Assembly: GCA_001179505.1 (NCBI GenBank)
Contig: CDMY01000466.1
Location: 124,001-188,000 of the forward strand
Source: Vitrella brassicaformis CCMP3155
Lineage: Eukaryota > Protista > Chromerida
Direction: 5' to 3'
DNA length: 64,000 nt
The position numbers and the translations under genes are program-made. The notes beneath the pieces are model-generated. The model searched no databases, had not been told where the DNA came from, and saw nothing but the letters and a program-made list of their open reading frames with translations. This document shows positions 24,629-40,000 of this stretch, in pieces (the first letter of the stretch is position 1; each line of letters opens with the position of its first letter).

Positions 24629-25083
24629 TTGAGGTGGCAAGTGGTTGGATTGGTGTAAGTGGTTGTATAGATGGTGGGTGGGTGAGGTGCCTAACTGTCC
24701 GTTTTGTGGCAGACGCGCCGTACACGAGCACACTGCTGGGGTGTAGAGAATATCATTGACTGCGTGATATTCATGCTGCTGCAGTGGAAGGATGATACGT
24801 GTCAACGAGTGCTGCCGGTGTGTACACCACATCCATCTGCCTTTCTTCTTCCTTGTGTGCACATGGTGACTTGACTTGCAGTCGACGTGAATGCTCCTAC
24901 TTTCTGTGTACAGCAGCACTGGCAAACCATCCATTCTGAATCGTCTGATTCCACGTCAGCTTCTTCCTTGATCTGACGATCGTGATCACATGTCTGTCTG
25001 CATGCATCGGATGGAAGGCATTCACAGTCGACAACAGACACCGACAGGTATAAAATGCAGGCAGCGATTAAGCAGATTATCCG

Positions 25084-25147: not shown

Positions 25148-28100
25148 GCACCACCCAGGCAGTCGATCCGCACACAGTCACACTGACCTCTGTCTGCACC
25201 ACATCCATCCATCCATCCATCCATCAGGGCCATCAGGGTGTGATCGATTTGATTGATGGGTGGATGTGAGTGAAAGTGAGTGAGCCACACACAGAGCGGG
25301 GCGGGACATCAAAAGCAAGGTTCGTTCGAGGGAGGAGGGAGGGAGGAAGCAAACAAACAAACCGGTGCACGGATGGATGGATGCATCATCTGACTCACTC
25401 ACTCAAGAAGGTCTGAAATCACAACCCACCCACCCACCCACCCAGCCGGACAGGCACCACAGCAGCCATACCCGCACATCCATCCATCCATATCTACACA
25501 CAGCTGACATGATCAACCCAAATGTGTAGGTAACACACACTACCCATGAATGAGTGCGGGACGGGACCTGAGTCTCCCTCCGTCAGTGAGTGACCACCAC
25601 ACCACAGCACAGCACCGACGACCGACGACCGACACCACCACAGATGCAGACAGACAGATGCAATGCAGCACACCACACCACCATGGACTGACTTGCTGCA
25701 CTTCCCTGTCTTCATCTGTCTGGGGGGCCTGGCTATATATATCCCTCCCTCCCTGCTCTCACACCCTGCAACAAACACTACAGCGGGTGAGTAGGGCCGG
25801 CAAAGTTTGCATCAATCACGGCATAGATGTGAAAGTGAGTGGAAAACATATTCCATCCGATGTAGACACCGATGTAAAATCCATCTGCGTCCCCTCCCCT
25901 TCCCTTCCCTTCCTCCCTCTTTCTCCCTGTCCCTCCATTGCATATCCATTGGCGATATAACACCCACTCGCACACTCATAATCGATTCATCATGGTCGCG
26001 TTGGTGGCGCCTCAAAAATACCCAAAGACCACGCAGGACCGTGGAGAAAACCGCCTTCTCCCTCCCCGCATCCCACACAGTCAGCTGACCTCACTCATGT
26101 CTCCATCCAATGACCTTGAGGGAATCGCTTCTTTTAGCTTCTTTCCGCAGCGAATACTGCTCTTTCTGGCGTGTCTTCGTCTCCTGCGCCACCTGACACC
26201 ATGAGCATCTCCTGGCGGTGATCTGGTGATGGGTCATTACTCCAGCCGCGTCACCCGTGAATGGGAGTCCAGCTGCACATACATTCACGCGACACACTGC
26301 CACTGCTTTTCTTTTGGTAGCCCAACATATACCCATCACGTGGATGTCTATGTTCGTATTGGGGCAGCAAAAGTGCATAAACCTCGTCCAGAGCTGGTGC
26401 ACAAGTCGCGAGGATCACTATCCTCCAATGCCGGCAACGGGACATCAGCGGGGAGGTGAAGGTCGCTCACTGTTACTTCAACGCGCTCAGGGCAGGCTGT
26501 CTTCTGCACTCCTCGCTTTCAGGGCTCCACTGGCTCATTTTCTGGGTAAGTAGATAATGCAGCAATTGGCCGGGAGGGGAAGCCTGCAGATGCAATGCAA
26601 CCAGAGAGAGAGAGAGAGAGAACAGAAGACACAGGTATGTATGTATGTATGCATTTGTGTAGACACGTGTCCTCACTGACTCACATATTTGGCAACTGTG
26701 TTTGGGGCTGTGCGCTGGCCGCCTATGCCCTCCACTCCGCGACCCGGGCATCAGCGTCCCCATCTGCACATGCTGCAAAGCCTCACTACACACACACACA
26801 CACACACACAAGAGAGAGAGAGAGAGAGAGACATTCGAATGTGACAAAATGACTTACTTGCACTCATACAATAAAATGACGCTACATGCAGTGTGGATTG
26901 GCTGCCTACGTCCATTCACTATCTACCTACGTCTTTCTTTCTCCCCGGAGGGCCTGGAGGAAGCTGCAAAACCGCTCGGACGAGACCTCTCAAACACTTT
27001 CTGCATGATGCACATACCGGAGAAACGCGCTTGTCAATTCAGCAGTGAGGAATGCATCGCGCCCGCCCACGCAAGGCTCCGTTCTCTTGCTATTCTGCCC
27101 ATCGCTCCATTCTCTCATGTGCGGTGCTCACCTTCGTCGGGACATTGTGACGGCCAAGCGGCTGCCGTATTGCACTCGAAATCGGACAGACGTCTTGTCT
27201 GTTGCTTACCTGCCGAGAAAGGAAAGACACGATGTCTCAGTGTGTCGCCTACCGCCAGGAATTCAGCAAACGGCAAAATTGCCGTCCTTGGCGATTTGGG
27301 TGGCCTCGGCAACTCGGAAATCACTCCATAAAATGTGAGACACACACCCCACATGTGAGCTGTGGCTGACCGGCGGATGAGTGCATTTGTCCATCTGACC
27401 TTGTCAAGTGGTTAGAGGTGGTTGTCGGGTGGCTGACGAGGTGTGGGATAATGCCGGCTGCTGGCGGCTTTGTCTGATGAGAGTCGACACACCAAATCGT
27501 TTGCAACTCACACACTCACCTGCCAAGCAGTATGTATTCTTGAGAGACACGCAGCGAGCTCTGAGACAAGATCAGCCGCACAGGGGACACACGTGTTTGT
27601 GGTCCATTCGGTGTGCCAGTGTCATGTTGTGATTGTTGTTGTACCATTGGCATACAGTCCATAGGCATAGCTCTTGGCAGGAGGTGTGGGAGTGGGGAAC
27701 GTGCTCTCCTCCATCAGTACGCTGGGCGGCGGCAGAGATGGTCAAATCCTTGATCTGCCTGAATGGCGCACAATCACAGTGGGCTGCAGCTCTCCTTTTG
27801 TGCGGGGACTCACTCACAGCGAGGCCGTGGAATGGATGGTGGGGAGTACGCGAGAACCCAGGCAGGGCTTCAGTGCTGAACACGACCAAACTTGGACACT
27901 TCAATTCTCACGTCAGATGTTTGGTGTGACGCCCTCGTTCACCTCATCACGTAAGCACGTCGACGAGAGAGCGTCAGAAGCGGTCGACACAGACTGCTGG
28001 ATATAAAATGTAGGCGGCGATTGATTGACTTGCAGCACTGAGGAACATAAAGACATGAATGTGACACACCGAGGAGACCGAACCAGACACTCCATCTTTT

Positions 28101-28149
28101 TATGGACGCTGTGGAATCAATCGGTCAAGGCATGTGGCCCCCATGTGAG

Positions 28150-29127
28150 CTTACGGGTTCTGTGTGGTAGCGTATGATGCGGTGTGCTGCGGCGACATCG
28201 ACACTCGGGCGGCTCGCGTCATCGGGTTCCACCACGACATCCGGCTCCTGACACGAAAACGAAGGGAGTATGTGTGTGTGTGTGCGTGTATCTGTGTGTG
28301 TACCCACTCCCTCCCTTCCCACTGACCCCAAAGATTCGCCTCTTGGTCTCCTCATAGTGCAGCTCTCGCTTCTCGAATGGCACTGGCTGACCTTGGGGCT
28401 CATCGCGGCGGCCTCGCCCGTCTGTCGGTGGGCTCGTCATGGTCTCGAACCTGGAGCCGCACTTGCAGCAACCCCTTCTCGGCGTCATCCACCCACTCTG
28501 GCATCGCCGGCTTGTCGAACGTCAGCGCCTCCTCTTCGGGGGGCTTCCAGGTCCCAACCACAGCCAGCCGTCCACTGATCCTCCTCTCGATGAGCTCCTG
28601 AGCGTCCTTGACGGCGGCAAGAGGGCCCTTGATCGTCACCTGAGTGCACAAGCACACACACGCACACACGCGCGCCCGCAGAGAGAGAGAGAGGTGTCTG
28701 TCTGTCTCGTCTGTGTGTCCTTCCTTGACTCTCGGTGTGGTGTGTTTGGAGCCTACGGTGCGATATGGTGCGGTGGACAGCGGCCCCTCACTGATGATGT
28801 GGACGCTGGTGGCCGACCTGCGCTCGATATCCCTGACCGTCCTGCCCTGCCTGCCGATGATCCGTCCCACCAAGCCAGCCGGCACCACACACTCCCGAAC
28901 CACAGTCTCGTTGTCAGTCACCTCCGCCGGCGACCTGAGTGCGGGTGGTGGGCTGTGCTGCTGCTGCTGCTGCTGCTGGTGGGGGTGGGGGTAGGGGTGG
29001 GGGTGTCTGGGGACTGCGGGGGTCTTGTGTGGGTGTGTGCCAGCGGGGGTGTGGGGGTCTCGTCGAGCAGTTCGTTGAGGCGGATCACGGTGCGGGTGGA
29101 TGAATTGCTCCTCTCACGATACATGGC
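28150..29127 (-). pseudogene. KH-SUZ-VDV module, unit 4 (frameshifted)
   Basis: KH: VVPAGLVGRIIGRQGRTVRDIERRSATSVHII|VTIKGPLAAVKDAQELI. SUZ-like FEKRELHYEETKRRIFG lies in a different frame (shift near 28405). Next exon is SVDVAAAHRIIRYHT. Confidence 0.75.
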
Positions 29128-29189
29128 CTGATGGACACACACACGCAAAGACGCACACCAATGGCCTGGCCCCTGTTTGGTTGTGATGT

Positions 29190-30070
29190 CTCTGTGTGCA
29201 CCGTTTGGACACTGTTTGCATCGGTATGTGATGGCGAATGGAGCGCTCGGCGGCCTCGACATCGACGCTTAGGCATCTCTGCAAGCAACACATACAAACA
29301 GAGAAAACAGACAGAGGCAGTGCATGTGTGTGTGTCCACTCCCTCACTCCCTGCCCACTGACCCCGAAGATCTTCCGCCTGGTTTCGTCGTAGTGCTCCA
29401 ACCGTTCCTCGATAGGCTTGTCGGTACGGACGGGCTCCTCTCCATCCCTCCGCCGGCCGGCCTGGGCGGCGTCCGGGGGCCGCTTCATGATGGCCACATC
29501 GCCCGCCGTCGCATTGCGCCGTCGCGCGGTGGATCCATTCAGGTTGCGGCGGGCGGGCGAACTCTACCGGCTCGTCTTCAAGAAAGGCTGCTGGGCGGTA
29601 GGTGGCGACCTCCAGGATGGGCGACTTGATCTTGGCCTCGATCAGCTGCCTGGCAACCGTCATCTGAGTGGCGCACACCCACACACAGCGCAGACAGAGA
29701 GACAGACAGAGAGACAGCGGTTTGTCTGTCTGTCAGTCATGTGTGTAGAGCGTATGTACCATGCGGTGTGGTGCGTTGGGCGGCACGTTATTGAGCACCT
29801 GGATCTTGGTGCCCGAAATCTGCTGCGTCTCCCTCACCGCTTGGCCCCCGCAGCCGATTATCCGCCCCACCACTGCAGCCGGCACCACAAAGTCGGTAAC
29901 CACGACACAGTCGACCTCCTCATTGAACTCCTCGTGCCGCGGCTGCTGGTGGAAGTGGTGCTGGTGGTCAAGCGGAATGGGCGCCCGGCCCTGCCCTGGT
30001 GTGGGAGCTGGAGTGGTGGGGGCGGCTGCACGTTGTGAGGGAGGTGTGCTGGGCTGCGGTCTTGATTGAG
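29190..30070 (-). pseudogene. KH-SUZ-VDV module, unit 3 (frameshifted)
   Basis: KH: FVVPAAVVGRIIGCGGQAVRETQQISGTKIQV. SUZ KPIEERLEHYDETRRKIFG is out of frame because of a 13-nt duplication at 29504-29525. VDVEAAERSIRHH exon follows. Confidence 0.75.
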
Positions 30071-30399
30071 TCCTGCACACTCAGGGCGTGAACGAGACAC
30101 GAAACAAAGCACTGAGGCGCCCATATGTGCGCCACTCTATTACCTCCTCTCAACAAGTCTACACGTGGGAGAGCGTCAAGGTGTCGAGCAAATACGTCCA
30201 CGGATATAAAATGTAGGCACCGATTGCAACCTACGGACACGATAGGATGCCCAGAAGACACAAACATTGGATACACACGACAGTGTTGTGCAGGAGTGTC
30301 GACTTACTGCAGCCCAAGTTTGGTCGATGAATCTAGTCACCCACCGATTCTGGTGTACATGGAGCCTACCGTGCGGCGGTTGCATGTGGTGGTGGATCA

Positions 30400-30574
30400 T
30401 CGAATCGTCAGCTGAGTGCACAAGCACACACACACACGCGCGCGCGCAGAGAGAGAGAGAGAGAGAGGTGTCCGTCTCCTCTGTGTGTCAGTGTGTCCTT
30501 CACTCCTGGGGTGGTGTTTGGAGCCTACGGTGCGATATGGTGCGGTGGAGAGCGGCCCCTCATTGATGATGTGC
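30400..30574 (-). pseudogene. KH module fragment, unit 2, truncated by gap
   Basis: HIINEGPLSTAPYRT|LTIR* matches the end of the KH exon of units 1 and 4. The 5' part is lost in the N gap. Confidence 0.6.
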
Positions 30575-30874
30575 NNNNNNNNNNNNNNNNNNNNNNNNNN
30601 NNNNNNNNNNNNNNNNNNNNNNNNNNNNNNNNNNNNNNNNNNNNNNNNNNNNNNNNNNNNNNNNNNNNNNNNNNNNNNNNNNNNNNNNNNNNNNNNNNNN
30701 NNNNNNNNNNNNNNNNNNNNNNNNNNNNNNNNNNNNNNNNNNNNNNNNNNNNNNNNNNNNNNNNNNNNNNNNNNNNNNNNNNNNNNNNNNNNNNNNNNNN
30801 NNNNNNNNNNNNNNNNNNNNNNNNNNNNNNNNNNNNNNNNNNNNNNNNNNNNNNNNNNNNNNNNNNNNNNNNNN
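30575..30874. other. Assembly gap (300 N)
   Basis: Run of N. Confidence 1.
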
Positions 30875-32015
30875 GGAATCAATCGGTCAAGGCATGTGGC
30901 CGCCCATGTGAGCTTCGGGTTCTGTGTGTAGCGGCGGATCATGCGGTTGGCGGCGTCGACATCGACGCGGATGCGGTCGTCCTCCACATCGGGCTCCTCA
31001 TCCTTCTGCATGGATACATAGATACATACCAGACACGGAAACAGAGGCAGTGCATGTGTGTGCGTGTGTGTACCCACTCCATCACTCCCTGCCCCACTGA
31101 CCCCGAAGATCTTCTTCCTGGCCTCCTCGTACCGCCTGTCTTTCTCAAGGAGTGGCGCCGGCTGGCTGTCGGGATCCTCGCTGTCAGGGGCTCGCTGGTG
31201 GATGGGCATGTCGGGCTCTCGATCCTGGATCCTCACCTGCACTTCGCCTTTCTCGGCTTCCTCCACCCAGTCGGGCATCGGCGGCTTCTCGAACTGCACC
31301 GGCTCCTTGTCCGCATCTGGCGGCTTCCACGTCCCAACCACAACAGCCGGAGCCTTGATCCTCGCCTCGATGAGCCTGTGGGCGTGCTTGACGCCAGCGA
31401 GCGAGCCCCTGATGGTGAGCTGAGTGCACAAGCACACATATACACGCAGAGAGAGGGAGAGAGAGGTGTCTGTCGGTCTGTCTGTCTGTCTGTCTATCTG
31501 TCTGGTCTGTGTCGTCTGTGTGTCCTTCCTTGACTCTCGGGGTGGTGTGTTTGGAGCCTACCATGCGGTGCGGTCCGGTCGATGGCGGCACCTCTTTGAT
31601 TATGTTGACCTTGGTCGTCGACTGGTTCTCGATCTCCTTAATCGTCCCGCCGCCTTTGCCGATGATGCGCCCCACCAAGCCAGCGGGAACCCGACACTCA
31701 GTCCACACCTCAACTAACTCCCTCCCACTAGCTCTCACGCCGCCACCAACATCAACACCAGCACCAGCACCCACCCCCACACCCACCCCGCCGCCCTCCA
31801 CCTCCGCCGCCCTCTCCAACGTGCTAATGCCACTGCCCCCAGCTGCCAAGGGGGCGAGGATCCTCACTTGGCCGCTGTCTGCAGCTTGCATTCACCATCA
31901 TCATCTGGCACGTGCGACGGGTGAACGTGCCTTGAGTGAGCTCACCCGTTGTGTATTCTGGCGAATGATTCGCTTTGCGGTGGCGCCGTCGACCCGCGGC
32001 GACTCGCATCCTGCC
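30875..32015 (-). CDS. KH-SUZ-VDV module, unit 1 (reading frame appears intact), part of a larger multi-exon gene
   Basis: CRVPAGLVGRIIGKGGGTIKEIENQSTTKVNII|LTIRGSLAGVKHAHRLIEARI is a type I KH domain with a GKGG loop. It continues in frame to LLEKDRRYEEARKKIFG (SUZ-like) and then VDVDAANRMIRRYT. The preceding exon encodes PRVDGATAKRIIRQNT. Confidence 0.75.
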
Positions 32016-32122
32016 CCTGTGACACATACATATCAGACACGAAAACGAAGGGACTGCAGTACCACACGAGGACTCCAACCCCTTCCAAGGCAAATCTGGT
32101 AGGTGCGCAGGGACTGCCCGGT

Positions 32123-32790
32123 GTCGCTGCAGCTTGCAGCCAGTAGATGGCCGCCGAAGCGGCCAAGAGTGCGTTAAAAAACAGATAAAACAGAGGAGAC
32201 ATGAGCAAATCTACATGCTATTTTCTTCTTTCTGTCTTGCTTACGTACCTGAGCGGCTTGCCGCCAGATTCCTCTCGTCAGCTGGGTGACAGGTCAGACA
32301 AACATCTGAAGGATGGCGCAGATGATGGACTGATTGAAAAGTATCGGTGATCATTCTTAACGTGCACGTGACGGGGGTACCCGGCTCTCTCTGGTTGCGA
32401 GGGTGTGGTTGTTTCGTTGGACCAAAGCATTGCCTTTCTGAAAAGCAGAAACGAGAACACTGTCGCCAACAGCTCCACAGACGGCAGGGCAGTACCAGTT
32501 GAGACCTCGCCGAGGAAGAAAGTGGCGGGTGACGTTCGGTTCGGACGAGCTGGGAAGGGTCCTGTACAGGACAATAGAAGGAAACAGAAGGCGAGCAGGT
32601 CAGACAATGGCTGCCTGCAGCAAGTGCTGTCAGATTACCTGGAGTCCGCTTACCTTAATGATGACTTTGCGCGGGCTCATTGACGTCGTGCAGAAGAGGT
32701 TTTGAAAGGTCCGACGGATATAAAATGTAGGCACCGATTTGCAGGCGCACACAGAGGGGACGAGAGACATGACTGTGCACAGTGGCAAGA
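32123..32790 (-). repeat. Copy 1 of a ~670-bp direct duplication carrying a degenerate F-box-like exon
   Basis: Colinear with 36414-37070. Encodes ALPSVELLATVFSFLLFRKAMLW on the minus strand. The splice acceptor CTGCAG of copy 2 reads CTGCAA here. Confidence 0.85.
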
Positions 32791-32859
32791 CAGCGGACGG
32801 TTGGCATGAAGTGAAGAGTCGGCCAGACATGACATCTATAAAGAACCTTATATATGTGT

Positions 32860-33340
32860 GCGCTTACGCTGTCGGTGTGTTGTGGCGAATGATGCGCCCG
32901 GCGGCGTCGACATCGACCCTCGGGCGGCCCTGCAAGACGGGAAACACACGGGGTGCATGTACGTAATGTCCGTAATAGACAAATATCACTGACCCCATGG
33001 ACCGGCGCCCCTCTCTTGCTCTTCGACACCACCGCCTGCTTGGCCTTGGGCGGTGGTGGCCTCTTGGTGGGCGGCGAGGAGTGCCTCTTGGCCTGTGGCT
33101 GCTTCTTGGCTGGCGGTGGCGGTGGAGGCGGCGACACTGATGAGGGTAAAGAGGGTGCCATGAACTCGAGCAGCACCAAGGGCGACGGGCTCGTCTGCAT
33201 CAGCATGGCGTTGAGGTCGGGCCGCACCTCGTTACACATGTCCAGCAGCTTCTCCAGGCAGCCGGGGTCCCGTGCCCAGATGGCCTTCAGGACCATGAAG
33301 AAGCGCCTGGGCAGCTGCATGGTCACTCGCCGCCGCACAG
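32860..33340 (-). pseudogene. Related module fragment (Pro/Lys-rich exon plus VDV exon)
   Basis: The exon ends at a GGG|GTCAGT donor like the SUZ exons. The next exon is GRPRVDVDAAGRIIRHNTPT. Confidence 0.5.
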
Positions 33341-34869
33341 CCTTGGGTTGAGAAAGGCACAGCGGTCCCAGGTCTGGAGCTCCTGCGGGTGCGTGCTGAT
33401 AACGTGCACGTATTGGCCTGAGACCATATCACGTATTGGCCTCACAAGTAACACGAAAAAACTCGAATGTGAGCAACCTTCCAATCTTCAATTGATGCAT
33501 ACCCGAGCCATTCCTGAAGTTCTCGAGCTGAAACTGCGCGGCGGCCTCCGCCAACTTATCAAAGAGGTCCTGCCGCACACACACATCACCATCAAGGAAG
33601 GGAATGCACCCATACTCGTTTTCATCCGTGCGTGCAAGGAGGAATGCATCTGTCTGTCTGATGTCGAGGAATGCATCCGCCTCCCGTCGCCACAACGGTC
33701 CCTTGTGTGGCTATTCTGCCTCCCTCGCTGCCTCACTGCCCTTACCTCATCCATCGTGTTGTGTCGCGTCGTGACAAATTGCAATAATCCTGGCCCAACT
33801 GCAATAAGACATGGTCCACTCGTCGATGTACACATTGAGCTGTCTCGGTCTGATACACACACAAGACAGAGACCGGCCAAGCTGCAGGGAGACATGTGCT
33901 CCTCTGTCTTACTTCAGCGGGCGGTGCATACGAATTGGACTGACGTGGGAATCCGTATGAGAGTCTCACAGATATAAAACGTAGGCAGCGATCTGTCTGC
34001 AGACACAGAACAGGAGAGACACAGCAGATTGTCGATGAGCCTCGCCGTGATCTTGATAGGCCGTCAACTAGTTGCTCGCACACTCTGAAGTAACCGAAAC
34101 AACAGACAGAGAGACAGACACATCGATCGCCTCCACAGCAGATGTTTCTATGCATCGTGTTGCTCTCACTCCTCACCTCACCAGCGAAAGCAGATCAGTC
34201 GGTGATCGCGACCGCCCCGTCTCCCTCGCTGCCACTGACCGTTCCCCCCTGCCCTCCTGCTGCTGCTGCTGCTGCTGCTGTTGGCGGCGTTGGTCACGGT
34301 GTGCGGGGAGGGCAGAGGGAAGGCCACGGGCCGCCCAACGGGCCCCGCCCCCTCGTTGCGGCGCCACCATGGCCGGCGGCACGTCGCCCATGCGCTGGCC
34401 GCGCAGAATCACCCCGGTCACCGCAGGATCCATGGCCACGCCCAGGGCTGCGGCTTCAGACACTGACATACATAAAGACAATAAATATGTAACATCATAC
34501 ATACACGATGAATGAATTCAATCGTCGGGGCCCGGTGCAGACTGAATGAACGAATGAACGAATGAATGAATAAACGAATGAATGAGTCCCCCCTCCCTCC
34601 ATGCGCACCTACCAGATTTGCCTTCGAAGGGGTTCAAGTCCTCGTGTGATACTGGGCACGCTGCAACACGTGGCTCGACTGCATGGACAAGACGAGACGA
34701 TACGATACGAGACGAGACGAGACGACCCAACGAACGAGAGGAAAGGAAGAACGAAGGAAGAGAAAGTCTTAATTACAAGTTGTGAATGAATGCATTCATG
34801 ATCCACGGATTGGATTCGTGCGTCCCTTGGCTGTCTGTCTGTCTGTCTCCTCCCTATTCTCCCCCTCCC

Positions 34870-36400
34870 ACCCCGCCTACTTACCTTTCCTCCAAACGCG
34901 ATGGCCACCACCGCCGCCCCGCACAGCCGCCACCGTCCCTGAATGACCGGTGCTGCGCCACGTGGCGTCGTTGCATGCCGGTCTTGCCGAGCCCATGATG
35001 CGCTCCCTGGCCGCCGCATACTCCATCTCCTTCTCGTCCAGCGTGGTCGGCTCGCCACTCCGGCCCCCGGTATCAACACCACACTGCACGCACACACACA
35101 CACACACACACAGAAAACACGCACACAGAGAGAGACAGACATGTGAGAAACAGATAGATGTATGTAAAGGTGCCAAATGAATGACTAACCTCCTTTGACG
35201 AATCCTCGAGAATGCGGCGGCAGGCGTCACGGTCGAATCGACCACTGCAGGGGCGGTAAGGGCAGGTGAAGGTCGAGCTCCTGGGGTCCCCTCAGCGAGA
35301 GAGACACAGTCACCCCACCTCCCACACAGCACGATCCCGCAACACGAGGCCCTGAACGTCCGCGGCTACGGCTGGGCACACTCTGGGCGCCTGGCGCTCC
35401 GCGTGGAGGTTTGTGGCGGCAGTGGGGGTTGGGGCATTTGGTGTGTGTGTGGCGGCTGTCGACGGGGGCGACGGCCTCGAGTGCGGCCTTTTTGATGAGC
35501 GTTGGGGGCTGCTGGGCGACGTCTTCGCGCACCGTCAGCGCGGCCAGCCGGTTGATGTCCTCTCCTCGAGCGATGAGCGCCGTGAGCCTGTCCATCAAGA
35601 GCCGCACTCTGAGCTGCCCCACCGACATGACGTCGGGCGGCAGCTGCAGGAGGCGAAGCACGGTTGTCCAGTCTTTGTCAGGCACGCCTGCATACATAAT
35701 CAATCATGCATGCAACACAAATCAATCAATAGAGAAAAAGGCCCGCCTTTGCCCCACCCACCGAACCGACCGACCTGTCATGCCCTTGAACGTGGGTTGC
35801 GCCTTCCGTATGAGGACGATGTGTGCCGAGATAAGCGCCGTGCTTGCGTTGCGCTCCATGCTAGTACGGAGGGTCTCCTCTCACTCGTCACAGAAATCCT
35901 GATGGATGGATGGACACAACCAAAGGAATGGATAGACACCCATATATGGGTGTGGGTGTGGGTGTGGGTGTGGGTGGGTGAAATGTGTGATGTGTTGGTG
36001 GATGGATGGTTACCTACCTGTAGTTTGTGCAGGTTGGGGCGGAAGTCCAGCCACGTCTGGGAGGCAATCTCCTCAAGACCACTCACAAAACTCTCAAACA
36101 GCGCTTGGCTTTGTACTACCTGAACGAATAATTGCGGCACACGAGGCAAGAGAGAGACATGAGAACACAATGTTATATTGCCCATTCCTCCCCATCCCTA
36201 TCACTCACTCGGCTTCTCGGTCACGTTTGGGGAGGTCGGCCAAGTACTTAGCGTGCTGCTGATCCTGCATAAGGACACACACGAAAGGGACGACACGGAC
36301 ATCACACGAATGAGATGAGTGGGCGCTTCGTTCGTTGATTAACACATACCAGCTGCTGTGAGGTGCAGTATCTGTAGAATTCCTTGCCGGCCTCGCTCGG
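34870..36400 (-). pseudogene. Multi-exon SUZ- and Cys-motif-containing gene with an in-frame TGA
   Basis: Exons EAGKEFYRYCTSQQL, VVQSQALFESFVSGLEEIASQTW, DFCDE*EETL (TGA 35881-35883), DWTTVLRLLQLPPD..KCPNPHC, TCPYRPCSGRFDRDACRRILE and PTTLDEKEMEYAAARERIMG (SUZ). Confidence 0.55.
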
Positions 36401-36413
36401 GCGTTGCACTTGG

Positions 36414-37070
36414 TGTCGCTGCAGCTTGCAGCCAGTGAATGGCCGCCGAGGCGGCCAAGAGGGCATTGAAAAAAAAGGAAAACGGAGAAGACATGAGCAA
36501 ATCTATATGCTATTCTCTTCCTTCTGTCTTGCTTACGTACCTGAGCGGCTTGCCGCCAGATCCCTCTCGTCAGCTGGATGACAAGTCAGACAAGCATCTG
36601 AAGTATGGCGCAGATCAAGGATCGATTGAAAAGAATCGGTGATCATTCTTAACGTGCACGTGACGGGGGTACCCGGCTCTCTCTCTAGTCGCGAGGCTGT
36701 GGTTGTTTCGTTGGACCAAAGCATTGCCTTTCTGAAAAGCAGAAACGAGAAGACTGTCGCCAACAGCTCCACAGACGGCAGGGCGCGGCGCACTTCCAGT
36801 TGAAGGGACGAGACGGACCTCATAAGCCGATAAATAGCGAAAAATCTCGCGGCACATCTACAGGACGACAGCAGGTCATAGAAGGCGAGCAGGTCAGGCG
36901 ATGGCTGCTGCAGCAACTGCTGTCAGATTACATGGGGTCCGCTTACTTTAATGATGACTTTGCGCGGGCTCATTGACGTCGTGCAGAAGAGGGTTTGAAA
37001 AATCCGACAGATATAAAATGTAGGCACCGATCTGCAGGCGCACACAGAGGGGACGAGAGACATGAGTGTG
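36414..37070 (-). repeat. Copy 2 of the ~670-bp duplication (F-box-like exon)
   Basis: Colinear with 32123-32790. Also reads CREIFRYLSAYEVRLVPST in another frame, so it is frameshifted. Confidence 0.85.
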
Positions 37071-40000
37071 CAGAGTGAGACTCGGGATCCTGCACACGGC
37101 AGAAGATGACCTTTCCTCTGTGTGTGTCCGTAACCCCTGATGCGATCGTTGCTTTCTGCCTTCTTCTCATCTCGCGGGGCGATGAGGGGGAATCTGACAG
37201 AGACGGCAGGAGAGGAATGCACTGTGTGTTGGCCAGCAATTGTCATGTGCTCTCTCGCTCATTTTCCCCTGTTGTGGTCTCCATCATCGAGCGGCACCAC
37301 GAGCATAACTGCGACACAACCTGACTGACACACCCACATCAGAAGAGAGAGAGAGAGAGAGAGACGCCATCACAAGTTGATCCAAACATTGAAGGCCATG
37401 ATTAGGGGCCATCGTATCGGTGTCGTTTGGTGCTGTCCTGTTGCTGACTGTGTGTGAGGGGGGGACGCGCAGCATCCACAGAAGCTAGAGCCCCGAAGAC
37501 CTTAAACGAGCACAGCGGTCTGCAGACACGGGATCGCAGAGACACCATCGTGCCAAGTTACATGTATCGTGAGGCGCTCCTCAAAGTACTTCACAGCGCA
37601 GCGCATCGGTCGATTTGGCGTAAAGAATCCGCCGAATATAAAGCGTAGGCAGCGATTCTGAACACGACCAGACATGCAAACACAGTTTCAATGTGACTTG
37701 TTCGAAGGCGGGTTGAGCTCGTCAGAGTTGGACGTTATGATTGATGACGTGTGGGTATTTGCCTGAGACCACATACACACACAAGTAAGACGAGGAATCC
37801 CGAATGTGAGCGACCTTCCATTCTTTAATTAATGAATACGTACCTGATCCATTCATGAAGGTCTCGAGCTGAAAGTCCGTGGTGGCCTCCGCCAACATAT
37901 ATGAAACATGGCAGTAGTACACTTGGACGTCGCGCGGGTAAGGGTAGATGACATGTAGGTATCGGCCTGAGACCACATACACACACAAGTCAGACACGAC
38001 AAATCCCGTATGTGAGCGACTTTCCATTCTTTAATTAATGCATACCCGAGCCATTAAGGAAGTTCTCGACCTCAAACCTCGTGTAGGCCAATGCTAACTT
38101 ATCAAACACCTCCTGCCGCACACACACATCACCATCAAGGAGGGGAATGCATGCAATGCACCCATACTCGTTTTCTCCATCCAGGCAATGAGGAATACAT
38201 CTGTCTGTCTGATGTCGAGGAATGTTGGAGGAATGCATCGCTCCCGTCGCCACAAAGGCACTCTCTCTTGCTATTCTACCGCTGGCATCGCTCTCTGCCC
38301 TCCTTGCTCCGTCCTTTGTGTGTCGTGCTCACCTCCTCTACGTCGTTTGCCTCGGTGGCCATGTGGGCGGGGGTTGCGGCGACGGCCATCCGGCTGGCCG
38401 TCCCTCCCGCACACATGGCCACGTACGCAGAAACACTCTCAAAGAAAGGCATTCTCACCAAATGCCGCAGCCGTCCCAAAAGCACTGAAGCGATCGCTGG
38501 GGGCGGAGAAGCCCGCTGAGCGGTTCCCAAGAGATATTTGCCCTGCTTATGACGAGTCGTGAGATATTTGGCTCTCGGCTGTCTGTCTCTTGTGGCCGCC
38601 GGGGGGGCTGAGCTCGTCGAGTAGGACTTTGCAGTAGTAGACCTGGAACTCATGGGTGTGGGTGCTAATGATGTGGATGTATTCACCTGAGACCACATAC
38701 ACACGCACACAAGTAAGAAGAGAAATCCCGAACGTGAGCGACTTTCCATTCTTTAATTAATGCATACCCGAGCCATTAAGGAAGTTCTCGACCTCAAACC
38801 TCGTGTGGGCCAATGCTAACTTATCAAACACCTCCTGCCGCACACACACATCACCATCAAGGAAGGGAATGGATGCAATGAGGAATGCATCTGTCTGTCT
38901 GATGTCGAGGAATGCATCCGCCTGCCCTTGCGTGGCTATTCTGCCCCTGGCCTGCATGCATGGCCTCCCTCGATGCCTCCCTCATCTCATTAATCGTGTT
39001 GTGTCGCGTCGTGCTGTTCACCTCAGCTAGTCGGCTGACTACCTCGACGCCCTGATGCATTCATTCATTAATGCGCACACCCAGACACACAGAGGGACCG
39101 ACCGGCATTCACATTGATGGTCGTTTGTTTTTCGTCGGCTCTCCGTTGTCTGTGTCCTGTGTGTGCCGGGCGGGTTGAGCTCGTCGATTAAGACTTTGCA
39201 GCAGTAGACCTGGACCTCATGGGTGTGGGTACGGATCACGTTGATGTATTCACCTGAGACCACATACGCACACAAGTAAGAAGAGAAATCCCCAATGTGA
39301 GCGACTTAATGCATACCCGAGCCATTCATGAAGTTTTCCATCTCGAACTGCGCGGTGGCCTCCGCCAACTTCTCGAAAAGGTCCTGCCGCACACACACAT
39401 CACCATCAAGGAAGGGAATGCACGCAATGCACCCATACTCGTTTTCTCCATCCAGGCAATGAGGAATGCATCTGTCTGTCTGATGTCGAGGAATGTTGGA
39501 GGAATGCATCGCTCTCGTCGCCACAAAGGCACTCTTTCTTGCTATTCTACCGCTGGCATCGCCCTCTGCCCTCCATGCTCCCGTCCTTCGTGTGTCGTGC
39601 TCACCACGTCGCTATCGTCTGCCTTGGTGGCCATGTGGTCGGGGCTTACAGCGACGGCCATCTGGCTGGCCGTCCCTCCCGCCCACATGGCCACGTAGGC
39701 GACGAAACTCCCCAACTGACAGAGAGGGCCTCACCAGAGAGAAACCAGCCGGAGAAGATAACTGACTTGAGAGAAAAGACGACGAAAACGAAAGAAAACC
39801 CCCAGAAAAAGACGCAGTCTCGCGTCGAGAAATCTCGCCTAATTTGAGAAGTGACGAAGGGACAATAGTCTTCGATGTACAATGACGGCTCCTCACCTGC
39901 GTAGCGATGGGCTCTTTTTGAACAACTTTTTGGTCTCTGCCTCCGCCTTGGTGCTTCCTTCACCTTCACTCTCAGCAGGTCAGGTCGATATGAAGTCCCG

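What the first reader, a model, noticed from the sequence alone, without database searches (positions are those of the whole stretch)
28150..35100. Tandem KH-SUZ-VDV array: candidate undescribed RNA-binding module under birth-and-death expansion
Seen: on the minus strand a three-part cassette repeats, with three complete KH domains (loops GKGG, GCGG, GRQG) and a fourth cut by a gap. Each KH is followed by a conserved linker (GTWKPP..FEKP.MP.W) and a SUZ-like helix (EK.R.YEEARKKIFG), always ending at the same GGG|GTCAGT donor. A short VDV exon comes next. A fourth SUZ (TLDEKEMEYAAARERIMG) is at about 35000. Established: type I KH domains bind ssRNA through the GxxG loop, and SUZ occurs in RNA-binding proteins such as R3H-SUZ (Encore/ARPP21) and SZRD1. 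Inference: I do not recognise a KH+SUZ repeat architecture as a named family. One intact unit among decaying copies suggests a fast-evolving post-transcriptional regulator family.
Basis: partly seen in the sequence, partly recalled or inferred. Interest (0 to 1): 0.75.

Follow-up and report, generated by a model that had tools for sequence, protein, structure and literature searches.

The report
Decaying KH-SUZ gene cluster in Vitrella
In the alga Vitrella brassicaformis a small cluster of duplicated genes joins a common RNA-binding domain (KH) to a SUZ domain, a pairing our searches found nowhere else. Only one copy is intact, and the public annotation merges three copies into one doubtful protein.

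Summary
On the minus strand of 28.1-31.9 kb lie three KH_1-positive units (A, B, C) and a relic (D) beside the N gap. Each unit has a KH exon, an exon with the KH C-half, a Pro/Trp linker and a SUZ domain, and a short 'VDV' exon. SUZ is real: unit B scores 32 bits (cut-off 25), and both conserved SUZ blocks align with five other Vitrella SUZ loci.

Only A is intact. B has a 27-nt deletion in the KH and a frameshift. C has a frameshift and a premature stop. D is a stub. The SUZ near 35 kb belongs to a separate gene without a KH.

The locus is already public as one 605-aa 'K Homology domain-containing protein' (CEM15534.1). That model jumps the gap and splices out homologous coding sequence to avoid the frameshifts, so I read it as a chimera.

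Exon 2 has no relative among 1.84 billion representative proteins, and none elsewhere in this genome. My reading is a young, species-private tandem gene cluster, mostly pseudogenes, patched by gene conversion. Its KH+SUZ pairing mimics R3H+SUZ regulators. Expression is untested.

The cluster lies in a same-strand array punctuated by a 22-nt motif that this scan had already noted on other DNA of this genome. Interest is modest.

The parts
31562..31891 (-). Unit A exon 1: ATG, a low-complexity N-terminus and the KH N-half (loop GKGG). It ends in phase 0 before GTAGGC.
   Evidence: KH_1 41.1 bits. Equals residues 1-110 of P0001.
31102..31419 (-). Unit A exon 2 (318 nt): KH C-half, linker (31267-31335), SUZ N-block (31213-31242) and SUZ C-helix (31102-31146).
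   Evidence: SUZ 17.8 bits, profile positions 4-53. Alignment with other Vitrella SUZ loci. Only three matches in the genome, all in this array.
30875..31005 (-). Unit A VDV exon (to about 30916) and its 3' flank. The conserved GTAAGC has lost its T, so the frame runs into the gap.
   Evidence: Alignment A1. Flank 40/40 identical to unit C.
30575..30874 (.). Assembly gap (N run) between the end of unit A and the middle of relic D.
30397..30573 (-). Relic D: the last 15 codons of a KH exon 1, the intron, then 4 codons of exon 2 and a stop. The rest has been replaced by unrelated sequence.
   Evidence: Its exon tail is 93% identical to C.
30203..30224 (-). 22-nt genome-wide motif between D and B. 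The public model translates it as coding sequence.
29760..30080 (-). Unit B exon 1: KH N-half (loop GCGG). There is no in-frame ATG upstream.
   Evidence: KH_1 31.6 bits. Frames.
29363..29663 (-). Unit B exon 2 (301 nt): a 27-nt deletion in the KH C-half, a degenerate linker and a frameshift. SUZ lies in the shifted frame.
   Evidence: SUZ 32.2 bits in the six-frame search.
29222..29278 (-). Unit B VDV exon, which lacks the acidic lead-in.
28757..28921 (-). Unit C exon 1: KH N-half (loop GRQG). There is no in-frame ATG upstream.
   Evidence: KH_1 37.8 bits.
28327..28639 (-). Unit C exon 2 (313 nt): intact KH C-half and linker, then a frameshift and a TGA at 28400-28402. The SUZ helix is out of frame.
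28125..28247 (-). Unit C VDV exon and a short read-through tail to a stop at 28125-28127.
28000..28021 (-). 22-nt motif about 110 nt downstream of unit C.
31946..32017 (-). Orphan VDV-like exon upstream of unit A.
32864..33569 (-). Neighbour gene G1, with no KH. Its penultimate exon ends at the same GGG|GTCAGT. Its VDV exon (32867-32929) ends in an in-frame TAA inside GTAAGC.
   Evidence: No Pfam hit.
34885..35083 (-). C-terminal half of the SUZ domain of a separate upstream gene, with no KH nearby.
   Evidence: SUZ 31.5 bits and 30.7 bits. KH map.

Best explanation
This is a species-private tandem cluster of small three-exon genes in Vitrella brassicaformis. Each ancestral unit encoded a protein of roughly 250 residues with these parts:
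- a low-complexity N-terminus;
- one type I KH domain, split by an intron;
- a Pro/Trp-rich linker;
- a full SUZ domain;
- a short acidic-plus-basic 'VDV' tail ending at a stop codon.

Duplication, unequal crossing-over and gene conversion produced the units A, D, B and C. D is a stub, B and C are pseudogenes, and only A keeps all three exons open. The public 605-aa three-KH protein is a chimeric gene model.

Inferred mechanism for an intact unit: the KH domain binds single-stranded RNA through its GxxG loop. The SUZ domain contacts UPF1, as it does in SZRD1 and ARPP21. The protein would then modulate nonsense-mediated decay or translational repression of the mRNAs it binds. That would make it a KH-based analogue of R3H-SUZ proteins.

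What is shown: the domains, the lesions, the restriction to this locus and the mosaic similarity. What is inferred: the one-gene-per-unit structure, expression and the UPF1 link.
For: Domains:
- KH_1 hits on three exons, 128 bits over the public model.
- SUZ is above the cut-off in unit B (32.2 bits). Both SUZ blocks and their spacing align with other Vitrella SUZ loci.

Lesions:
- Second-exon lengths are 318, 301 and 313 nt. C has an in-frame TGA, B a 27-nt deletion, and D is truncated.

Chimeric model:
- P0001 maps to A+B+C. It skips 30228-30957 including the gap, reads the 22-nt motif as codons, and removes 85 nt that are homologous to A's coding sequence.

One gene per unit:
- The VDV exon ends in an in-frame TAA in neighbour G1. 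It would also do so in A but for a 1-nt loss.
- The motif that recurs between genes genome-wide sits after D and after C.

Private to the species:
- Exon 2 finds only P0001 among 1.84 billion representatives. The four other hits are bacterial repeat proteins that match a Pro-rich stretch.
- It has only three matches in its own genome.

Recombination:
- The exon 1 tail is 93% identical between C and D but 70% between A and C.
- The start of intron 1 is 98% identical between A and C but 75% between C and D. Fisher p is 0.006 and 0.0008.

Mechanism:
- SUZ is needed for UPF1 binding and for relief of NMD-linked repression (PMC10470013).
- A UPF1 gene is present.
Against: - B and C have no in-frame ATG of their own, and no motif lies between B and C. 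That fits a multi-unit transcript.
- GTAAGC after the VDV exon also looks like a splice donor. In C and in the orphan exon the TAA/TGA is out of frame.
- Unit A has lost that stop. Its SUZ N-block carries Asp where the Lys of the UPF1-critical Lys-Arg pair sits (PMC10470013).
- dN/dS between A and C is only about 0.55, and about 1 or more against B.
- No transcript evidence was available.
- Near-identical patches next to a gap could partly be assembly artefacts.
Confidence: 0.55

Rival explanations
1. The annotation is right. A, B and C are exons of one gene that makes a 605-aa protein with three KH domains and two SUZ domains. The apparent frameshifts are real short introns.
For: The public model exists. 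B and C lack start codons of their own. There is no 22-nt motif between B and C.
Against: The model needs an intron across an unsequenced gap and the D relic. It codes through the intergenic motif. It removes sequence that is coding in A. It stops at C's frameshift-induced TGA before C's SUZ and VDV. The exon-2 length differences are typical of indels.
Confidence: 0.15
2. The whole cluster, unit A included, is non-functional debris. It would be one of the same-strand patchwork arrays of broken, fast-changing gene pieces that the 22-nt motif punctuates across this genome. On this reading the KH+SUZ junction never served as a protein.
For: There are seven same-strand motif copies across 25-38 kb. 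The region holds duplicated, inverted and orphan exon pieces. A has lost its stop and the SUZ Lys. There are no relatives anywhere. Earlier scan notes describe such arrays elsewhere in the genome.
Against: A keeps 246 codons open over three exons with intact splice sites. dN/dS of about 0.55 between A and C in both the KH and the linker hints at past constraint. KH, linker, SUZ and tail stayed collinear in three copies.
Confidence: 0.25
3. The SUZ resemblance is chance: just a charged helix after a KH domain.
For: Unit A alone scores 17.8 bits and the public model 22.5 bits, both under the 25-bit cut-off. The precomputed Pfam list for P0001 lacks SUZ.
Against: Unit B scores 32.2 bits over profile positions 5-54. 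Two separate conserved blocks with the family's spacing align with five other Vitrella SUZ loci.
Confidence: 0.05

Closest known systems
R3H-SUZ proteins (Encore, R3HDM1/2, ARPP21; yeast Rbs1; Neurospora PRD-2)
   Same: A single-stranded nucleic-acid-binding domain is followed closely by a SUZ domain. These are post-transcriptional regulators that act through UPF1 (PMC10470013, PMC7708074, PMC7746235).
   Different: KH stands in place of R3H, and no R3H was detected here or by the six-frame scan of the genome. The protein is much shorter. It is a single locus in one species. The Lys of the SUZ N-block is lost in the intact copy.
SZRD1 / SZY-20 (SUZ plus SUZ-C)
   Same: A small protein with a SUZ domain followed by a short conserved C-terminal tail.
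   Different: It has an N-terminal KH domain. The VDV tail gives no Pfam hit at all, SUZ-C included.
Multi-KH proteins of the PCBP / Nova / FUBP type
   Same: A type I KH_1 domain with a GxxG loop. These are the nearest sequence and model neighbours. The nearest paralogue in the genome is a multi-KH gene on contig C234, at 46% identity.
   Different: One KH per unit, followed by the linker, SUZ and VDV, which none of these proteins carry.
CEM15534.1 / UniProt A0A0G4FMX5, 'K Homology domain-containing protein' of Vitrella brassicaformis CCMP3155
   Same: It is this very locus, covering units A, B and C.
   Different: The public model is one 605-aa chain with no SUZ annotation. I read it as a merger of one intact gene and two pseudogenes.

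Membership tests
KH_1 (PF00013), type I KH | Profile score above the gathering cut-off of 21.5 bits | tested here: met
   41.1, 31.6 and 37.8 bits on the first exons alone. 128.5 bits with three stretches in P0001.
KH_1 (PF00013), type I KH | GxxG loop between the first two helices | tested here: met
   GKGG, GCGG and GRQG are read in the translations.
KH_1 (PF00013), type I KH | Complete domain, including the C-terminal strand and helix | tested here: inconclusive
   A matches profile positions 5-65 of 66, and C aligns in full with A. B lacks 9 residues of that part. D is a fragment.
SUZ (PF12752) | Profile score above the gathering cut-off of 25 bits | tested here: inconclusive
   Unit B scores 32.2 bits and the 35-kb gene 30.7-31.5 bits, both above the cut-off. 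Unit A scores 17.8 bits and the whole of P0001 22.5 bits, both below it.
SUZ (PF12752) | Both conserved blocks, the N-terminal hydrophobic-Lys-Arg-Pro block and the C-terminal Tyr/Arg helix, at the family's spacing | tested here: met
   Alignment A3 with Vitrella SUZ loci L004, L007, L008 and L009. In A and C the Lys is replaced.
SUZ (PF12752) | Binds UPF1 or RNA | not testable with these tools
   This property is known for SZRD1 and ARPP21 (PMC10470013). A UPF1 gene exists in the genome.
SUZ-C (PF12901) | Profile match of the C-terminal tail | tested here: not met
   No Pfam family at E up to 5 for four VDV exons.
R3H-SUZ proteins | R3H domain upstream of SUZ | tested here: not met
   No R3H hit on the exons. 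The six-frame scan of the genome found none. A KH occupies that place.

The most novel reading that the evidence does not exclude
Unit A is an expressed, functional KH-SUZ protein. On this reading it is an independently invented counterpart of R3H-SUZ regulators, tethering UPF1 control to KH-recognised mRNAs. It would have been born and be turning over inside a Vitrella-specific kind of array that shuffles exons between neighbouring genes and is punctuated by the 22-nt motif. The VDV tail and the GGG|GTCAGT junction are shared with an unrelated neighbour gene.
Probability: 0.15. Interest if true: 0.6.

Novelty: new variant of a known kind. Interest (0 to 1): 0.3.

Why it matters
If unit A is expressed, it would show that the SUZ module can be re-used with a different RNA-binding domain. 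That would support the view that SUZ is a portable effector for UPF1 and NMD control rather than part of an R3H-specific unit.

The locus is also a compact example of gene birth, exon sharing, gene conversion and decay in a chromerid genome. On the practical side, it flags a public protein model (CEM15534.1) that probably does not exist as annotated.

As things stand this is a single, mostly broken, species-private locus without expression evidence, so its weight is modest.

Tried and rejected
- Word search with the 174-aa ORF over A's exons 2 and 3 found nothing.
- Word search with P0001 found only generic KH proteins such as Nova-2.
- Word search restricted to A's SUZ region found only P0001 itself.
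- Both ESM Atlas look-ups gave generic KH neighbours or noise.
- Single-sequence AlphaFold of P0001 gave a mean pLDDT of 37, which is unusable.
- Pfam on the VDV exons, on G1's exons, on the upstream ORFs and on four plus-strand ORFs gave nothing meaningful.
- Rfam over 27.5-38 kb gave no match at E up to 1.
- The conserved intron patch and the 3' flank are not repeated elsewhere in the genome, so they are not a mobile intron or transposon.
- The look-up of contigs encoding P0001 returned no record, so neighbouring public gene models could not be read.
- A test of splice-like context around the 22-nt motif showed only weak enrichment: a donor within 70 nt in 44% of copies against 27% of controls.
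- No paper links Vitrella to spliced leaders in a way that bears on the motif.
Exons were searched one by one by reference, and the public model was used by its id.
I left that step out and derived the coordinates.
Full report
**Source.** The window is contig C466:124001-188000 of a 72.7-Mb, 1064-contig assembly. The protein that the locus matches is CEM15534.1 / A0A0G4FMX5 of Vitrella brassicaformis CCMP3155. That agrees with an earlier scan note on the neighbouring DNA. The region is intron-rich and about 58% G+C.

**Anatomy.** Reading the minus strand downwards from 31.9 kb, there are four related units.
- Unit A has an ATG-initiated exon 1 (31891-31562, phase 0, donor GTAGGC), exon 2 (31419-31102, 318 nt, ending GGG|GTCAGT) and the VDV exon (31005 to about 30916).
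- Relic D follows the N run. It keeps 15 codons of a KH exon, the intron and four codons of exon 2 before a stop (30573-30397).
- Unit B spans 30080-29222.
- Unit C spans 28921-28125.

**KH.** Pfam KH_1 is significant on each first exon (41.1, 31.6 and 37.8 bits against a cut-off of 21.5). Over the public model it reaches 128 bits.

**SUZ.** Unit A's exon 2 alone gives 17.8 bits, under the 25-bit cut-off. In the six-frame scan of the genome, unit B's copy gives 32.2 bits over nearly the whole profile. An alignment with four other Vitrella SUZ loci shows both conserved blocks at the usual spacing in A and B. I accept the SUZ assignment.

**VDV tail.** The short VDV exon has no Pfam match, SUZ-C included. 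A back-translated pattern finds it only at this locus.

**The gap.** The last letters before the Ns are the 3' flank of unit A, 40/40 identical to the flank of unit C. The first letters after the Ns lie in the middle of a KH exon and are 97% identical to C. The gap therefore separates the end of one unit from the inside of the next. There is no frame to preserve across it, and the long ORF that the ORF list shows across the Ns is an artefact. What the gap hides cannot be recovered with these tools. It should hold the end of A's open frame, any intergenic signal, and the first half of D's KH.

**State of the copies.** A is open through all three exons.
- B lacks 27 nt of the KH C-terminal strand and helix. 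Its exon 2 is 301 nt (3n+1), so its SUZ lies in a shifted frame.
- C's exon 2 is 313 nt (3n+1) and runs into a TGA at 28400-28402, 24 codons before its SUZ helix.
- D is truncated.
- B and C have no in-frame ATG.

A is not pristine either. The T of the conserved GTAAGC after its VDV exon is missing. Its SUZ N-block has Asp where the other loci have the Lys of a Lys-Arg pair. That pair is part of the four residues needed for UPF1 binding in human SZRD1 (PMC10470013).

**The public model.** P0001 (605 aa) is the only real hit of exon 2 among 1.84 billion representative proteins. The other four hits are long bacterial repeat proteins that match a proline-rich stretch. Mapping P0001 back to the window shows four problems.
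- It chains A, B and C.
- It leaves the VDV exon of A early and jumps over the gap and D to an 'exon' that is the translated 22-nt motif region.
- It removes 85 nt of B that are homologous to coding sequence in A.
- It ends at C's frameshift stop.

I read it as a predictor's way around pseudogene lesions.

**One gene per unit or one long gene?** Three points favour separate small genes.
- In the neighbouring non-KH gene G1, the VDV exon ends in an in-frame TAA inside GTAAGC.
- A would do the same with the lost T restored in the alignment.
- The motif that recurs between genes lies after D and after C.

Three points count against this: the missing ATGs of B and C, the absence of a motif between B and C, and the donor-like look of GTAAGC. 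I put 0.55 on separate genes with B and C dead, 0.15 on the annotated fusion and 0.25 on the whole cluster being dead.

**Evolution.** Between A and C, exons are 67-72% identical in the four-way MAFFT alignment, or 76-80% in pairwise alignment. NG86 gives dS of about 0.5 and dN/dS of about 0.55 for both the KH exon and the first part of exon 2. Against B the ratio is about 1 to 1.5. Counts are small.

The similarity is mosaic.
- The exon 1 tail is 93% identical between C and D but 70% between A and C.
- The first 50 nt of intron 1 are 98% identical between A and C but 75% between C and D.
- Intron 2 is 81% identical between A and B but 60% between A and C.
- The 3' flank is identical in A and C.

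Fisher p values run from 0.006 down to 4e-6. This incongruence points to gene conversion or unequal exchange among the units. Part of it could be an assembly effect beside the gap. The conserved patches occur nowhere else in the genome and match no Rfam family.

**Context.** The cluster is part of a larger same-strand stretch (25-38 kb) with several rearrangements.
- A 660-nt leader is duplicated, 32120-32784 against 36412-37077.
- There is an inverted exon fragment at 32057-32113.
- There is an orphan VDV-like exon at 31946-32017.
- The first exons of G1 form a tandem array at 37742-39700.

G1 shares the GGG|GTCAGT junction and the VDV exon with the KH units, so exons have moved between neighbouring genes. 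The upstream gene carrying the 35-kb SUZ has no KH. The only KH hits on this contig are A, B and C, and none of the five other SUZ loci has a KH beside it.

A 22-nt motif occurs seven times on this strand in 25-38 kb. Its 16-nt core occurs about 672 times in the genome with at most one mismatch, against 4 for a reversed control. Its flanks are unrelated. Among the first 100 listed places I count 15 same-strand and 2 opposite-strand neighbour pairs within 10 kb. Earlier notes of this scan describe what seems to be the same signal at other arrays of broken genes in this genome, with no agreed function. My own test of splice-like context was weak.

**Function.** This part is inference. KH type I domains bind single-stranded RNA at the GxxG loop, which is established knowledge. 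SUZ is required for the UPF1 interaction and for relief of NMD-linked translational repression by SZRD1 and ARPP21 (PMC10470013). Related R3H-SUZ proteins act on UPF1 in yeast and Neurospora, as cited there. Vitrella has a UPF1 gene. An intact KH-SUZ unit would therefore most likely work like an R3H-SUZ protein, with KH supplying the RNA contact. It is not a member of that family, because R3H is absent.

**Novelty.** I found no KH+SUZ relative and no paper on the pairing. I could not run a full count of domain co-occurrence. The locus is already in the public databases as a KH protein.

**Verdict.** This is a new variant of a known kind. It is real but local and mostly decayed, and its interest is about 0.3.

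Noticed in passing
window 28000-28021, 30203-30224, 32717-32738, 33971-33992, 37010-37031 (minus); weaker copies at 25047 and 37635 (minus) and 14503 (plus): A 22-nt motif whose 16-nt core occurs about 672 times in the genome (reversed control: 4). Its flanks are unrelated, and copies often lie in same-strand clusters between genes or gene pieces. Its role as promoter, RNA end or short exon is unresolved.
   Followed up: partly
window 37742-39700: A tandem array of four to five diverged copies of the first exons of the non-KH neighbour gene (33374-33773), 73-86% identical.
   Followed up: no
window 32120-32784 and 36412-37077: A 660-nt segment beginning at the 22-nt motif is duplicated at 85% identity. 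It forms a shared leader in front of the unit A gene and in front of the SUZ-only gene.
   Followed up: no
window 32057-32113 versus 34598-34654: An inverted, 91% identical copy of an exon of the SUZ-only gene sits upstream of unit A, next to an orphan VDV-like exon.
   Followed up: no
window 31512-31561 versus 28707-28756; 30875-30915 versus 28113-28154: An intron patch and the 3' flank are 98-100% identical between units A and C, while the adjoining exons are about 70% identical. The switches fall close to the splice sites. This is either gene conversion or an assembly effect.
   Followed up: partly
window 31213-31242: In the only intact unit the SUZ N-block has Asp where other Vitrella SUZ loci have the Lys of a Lys-Arg pair. 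That pair is required for UPF1 binding in human SZRD1.
   Followed up: partly
G000 contigs C276:45098-45406, C336:162017-162148, C1064:93955-94074, C33:201168-201302, C897:83046-83165: Five other SUZ-like loci in the genome, two above the Pfam cut-off. None has a KH hit nearby, and the six-frame scan found no R3H anywhere in the genome.
   Followed up: partly
P0002-P0005: Long bacterial surface-repeat proteins score against the Pro/Trp linker through a repeated proline-rich junction. I judged this similarity to be compositional, not homology.
   Followed up: no
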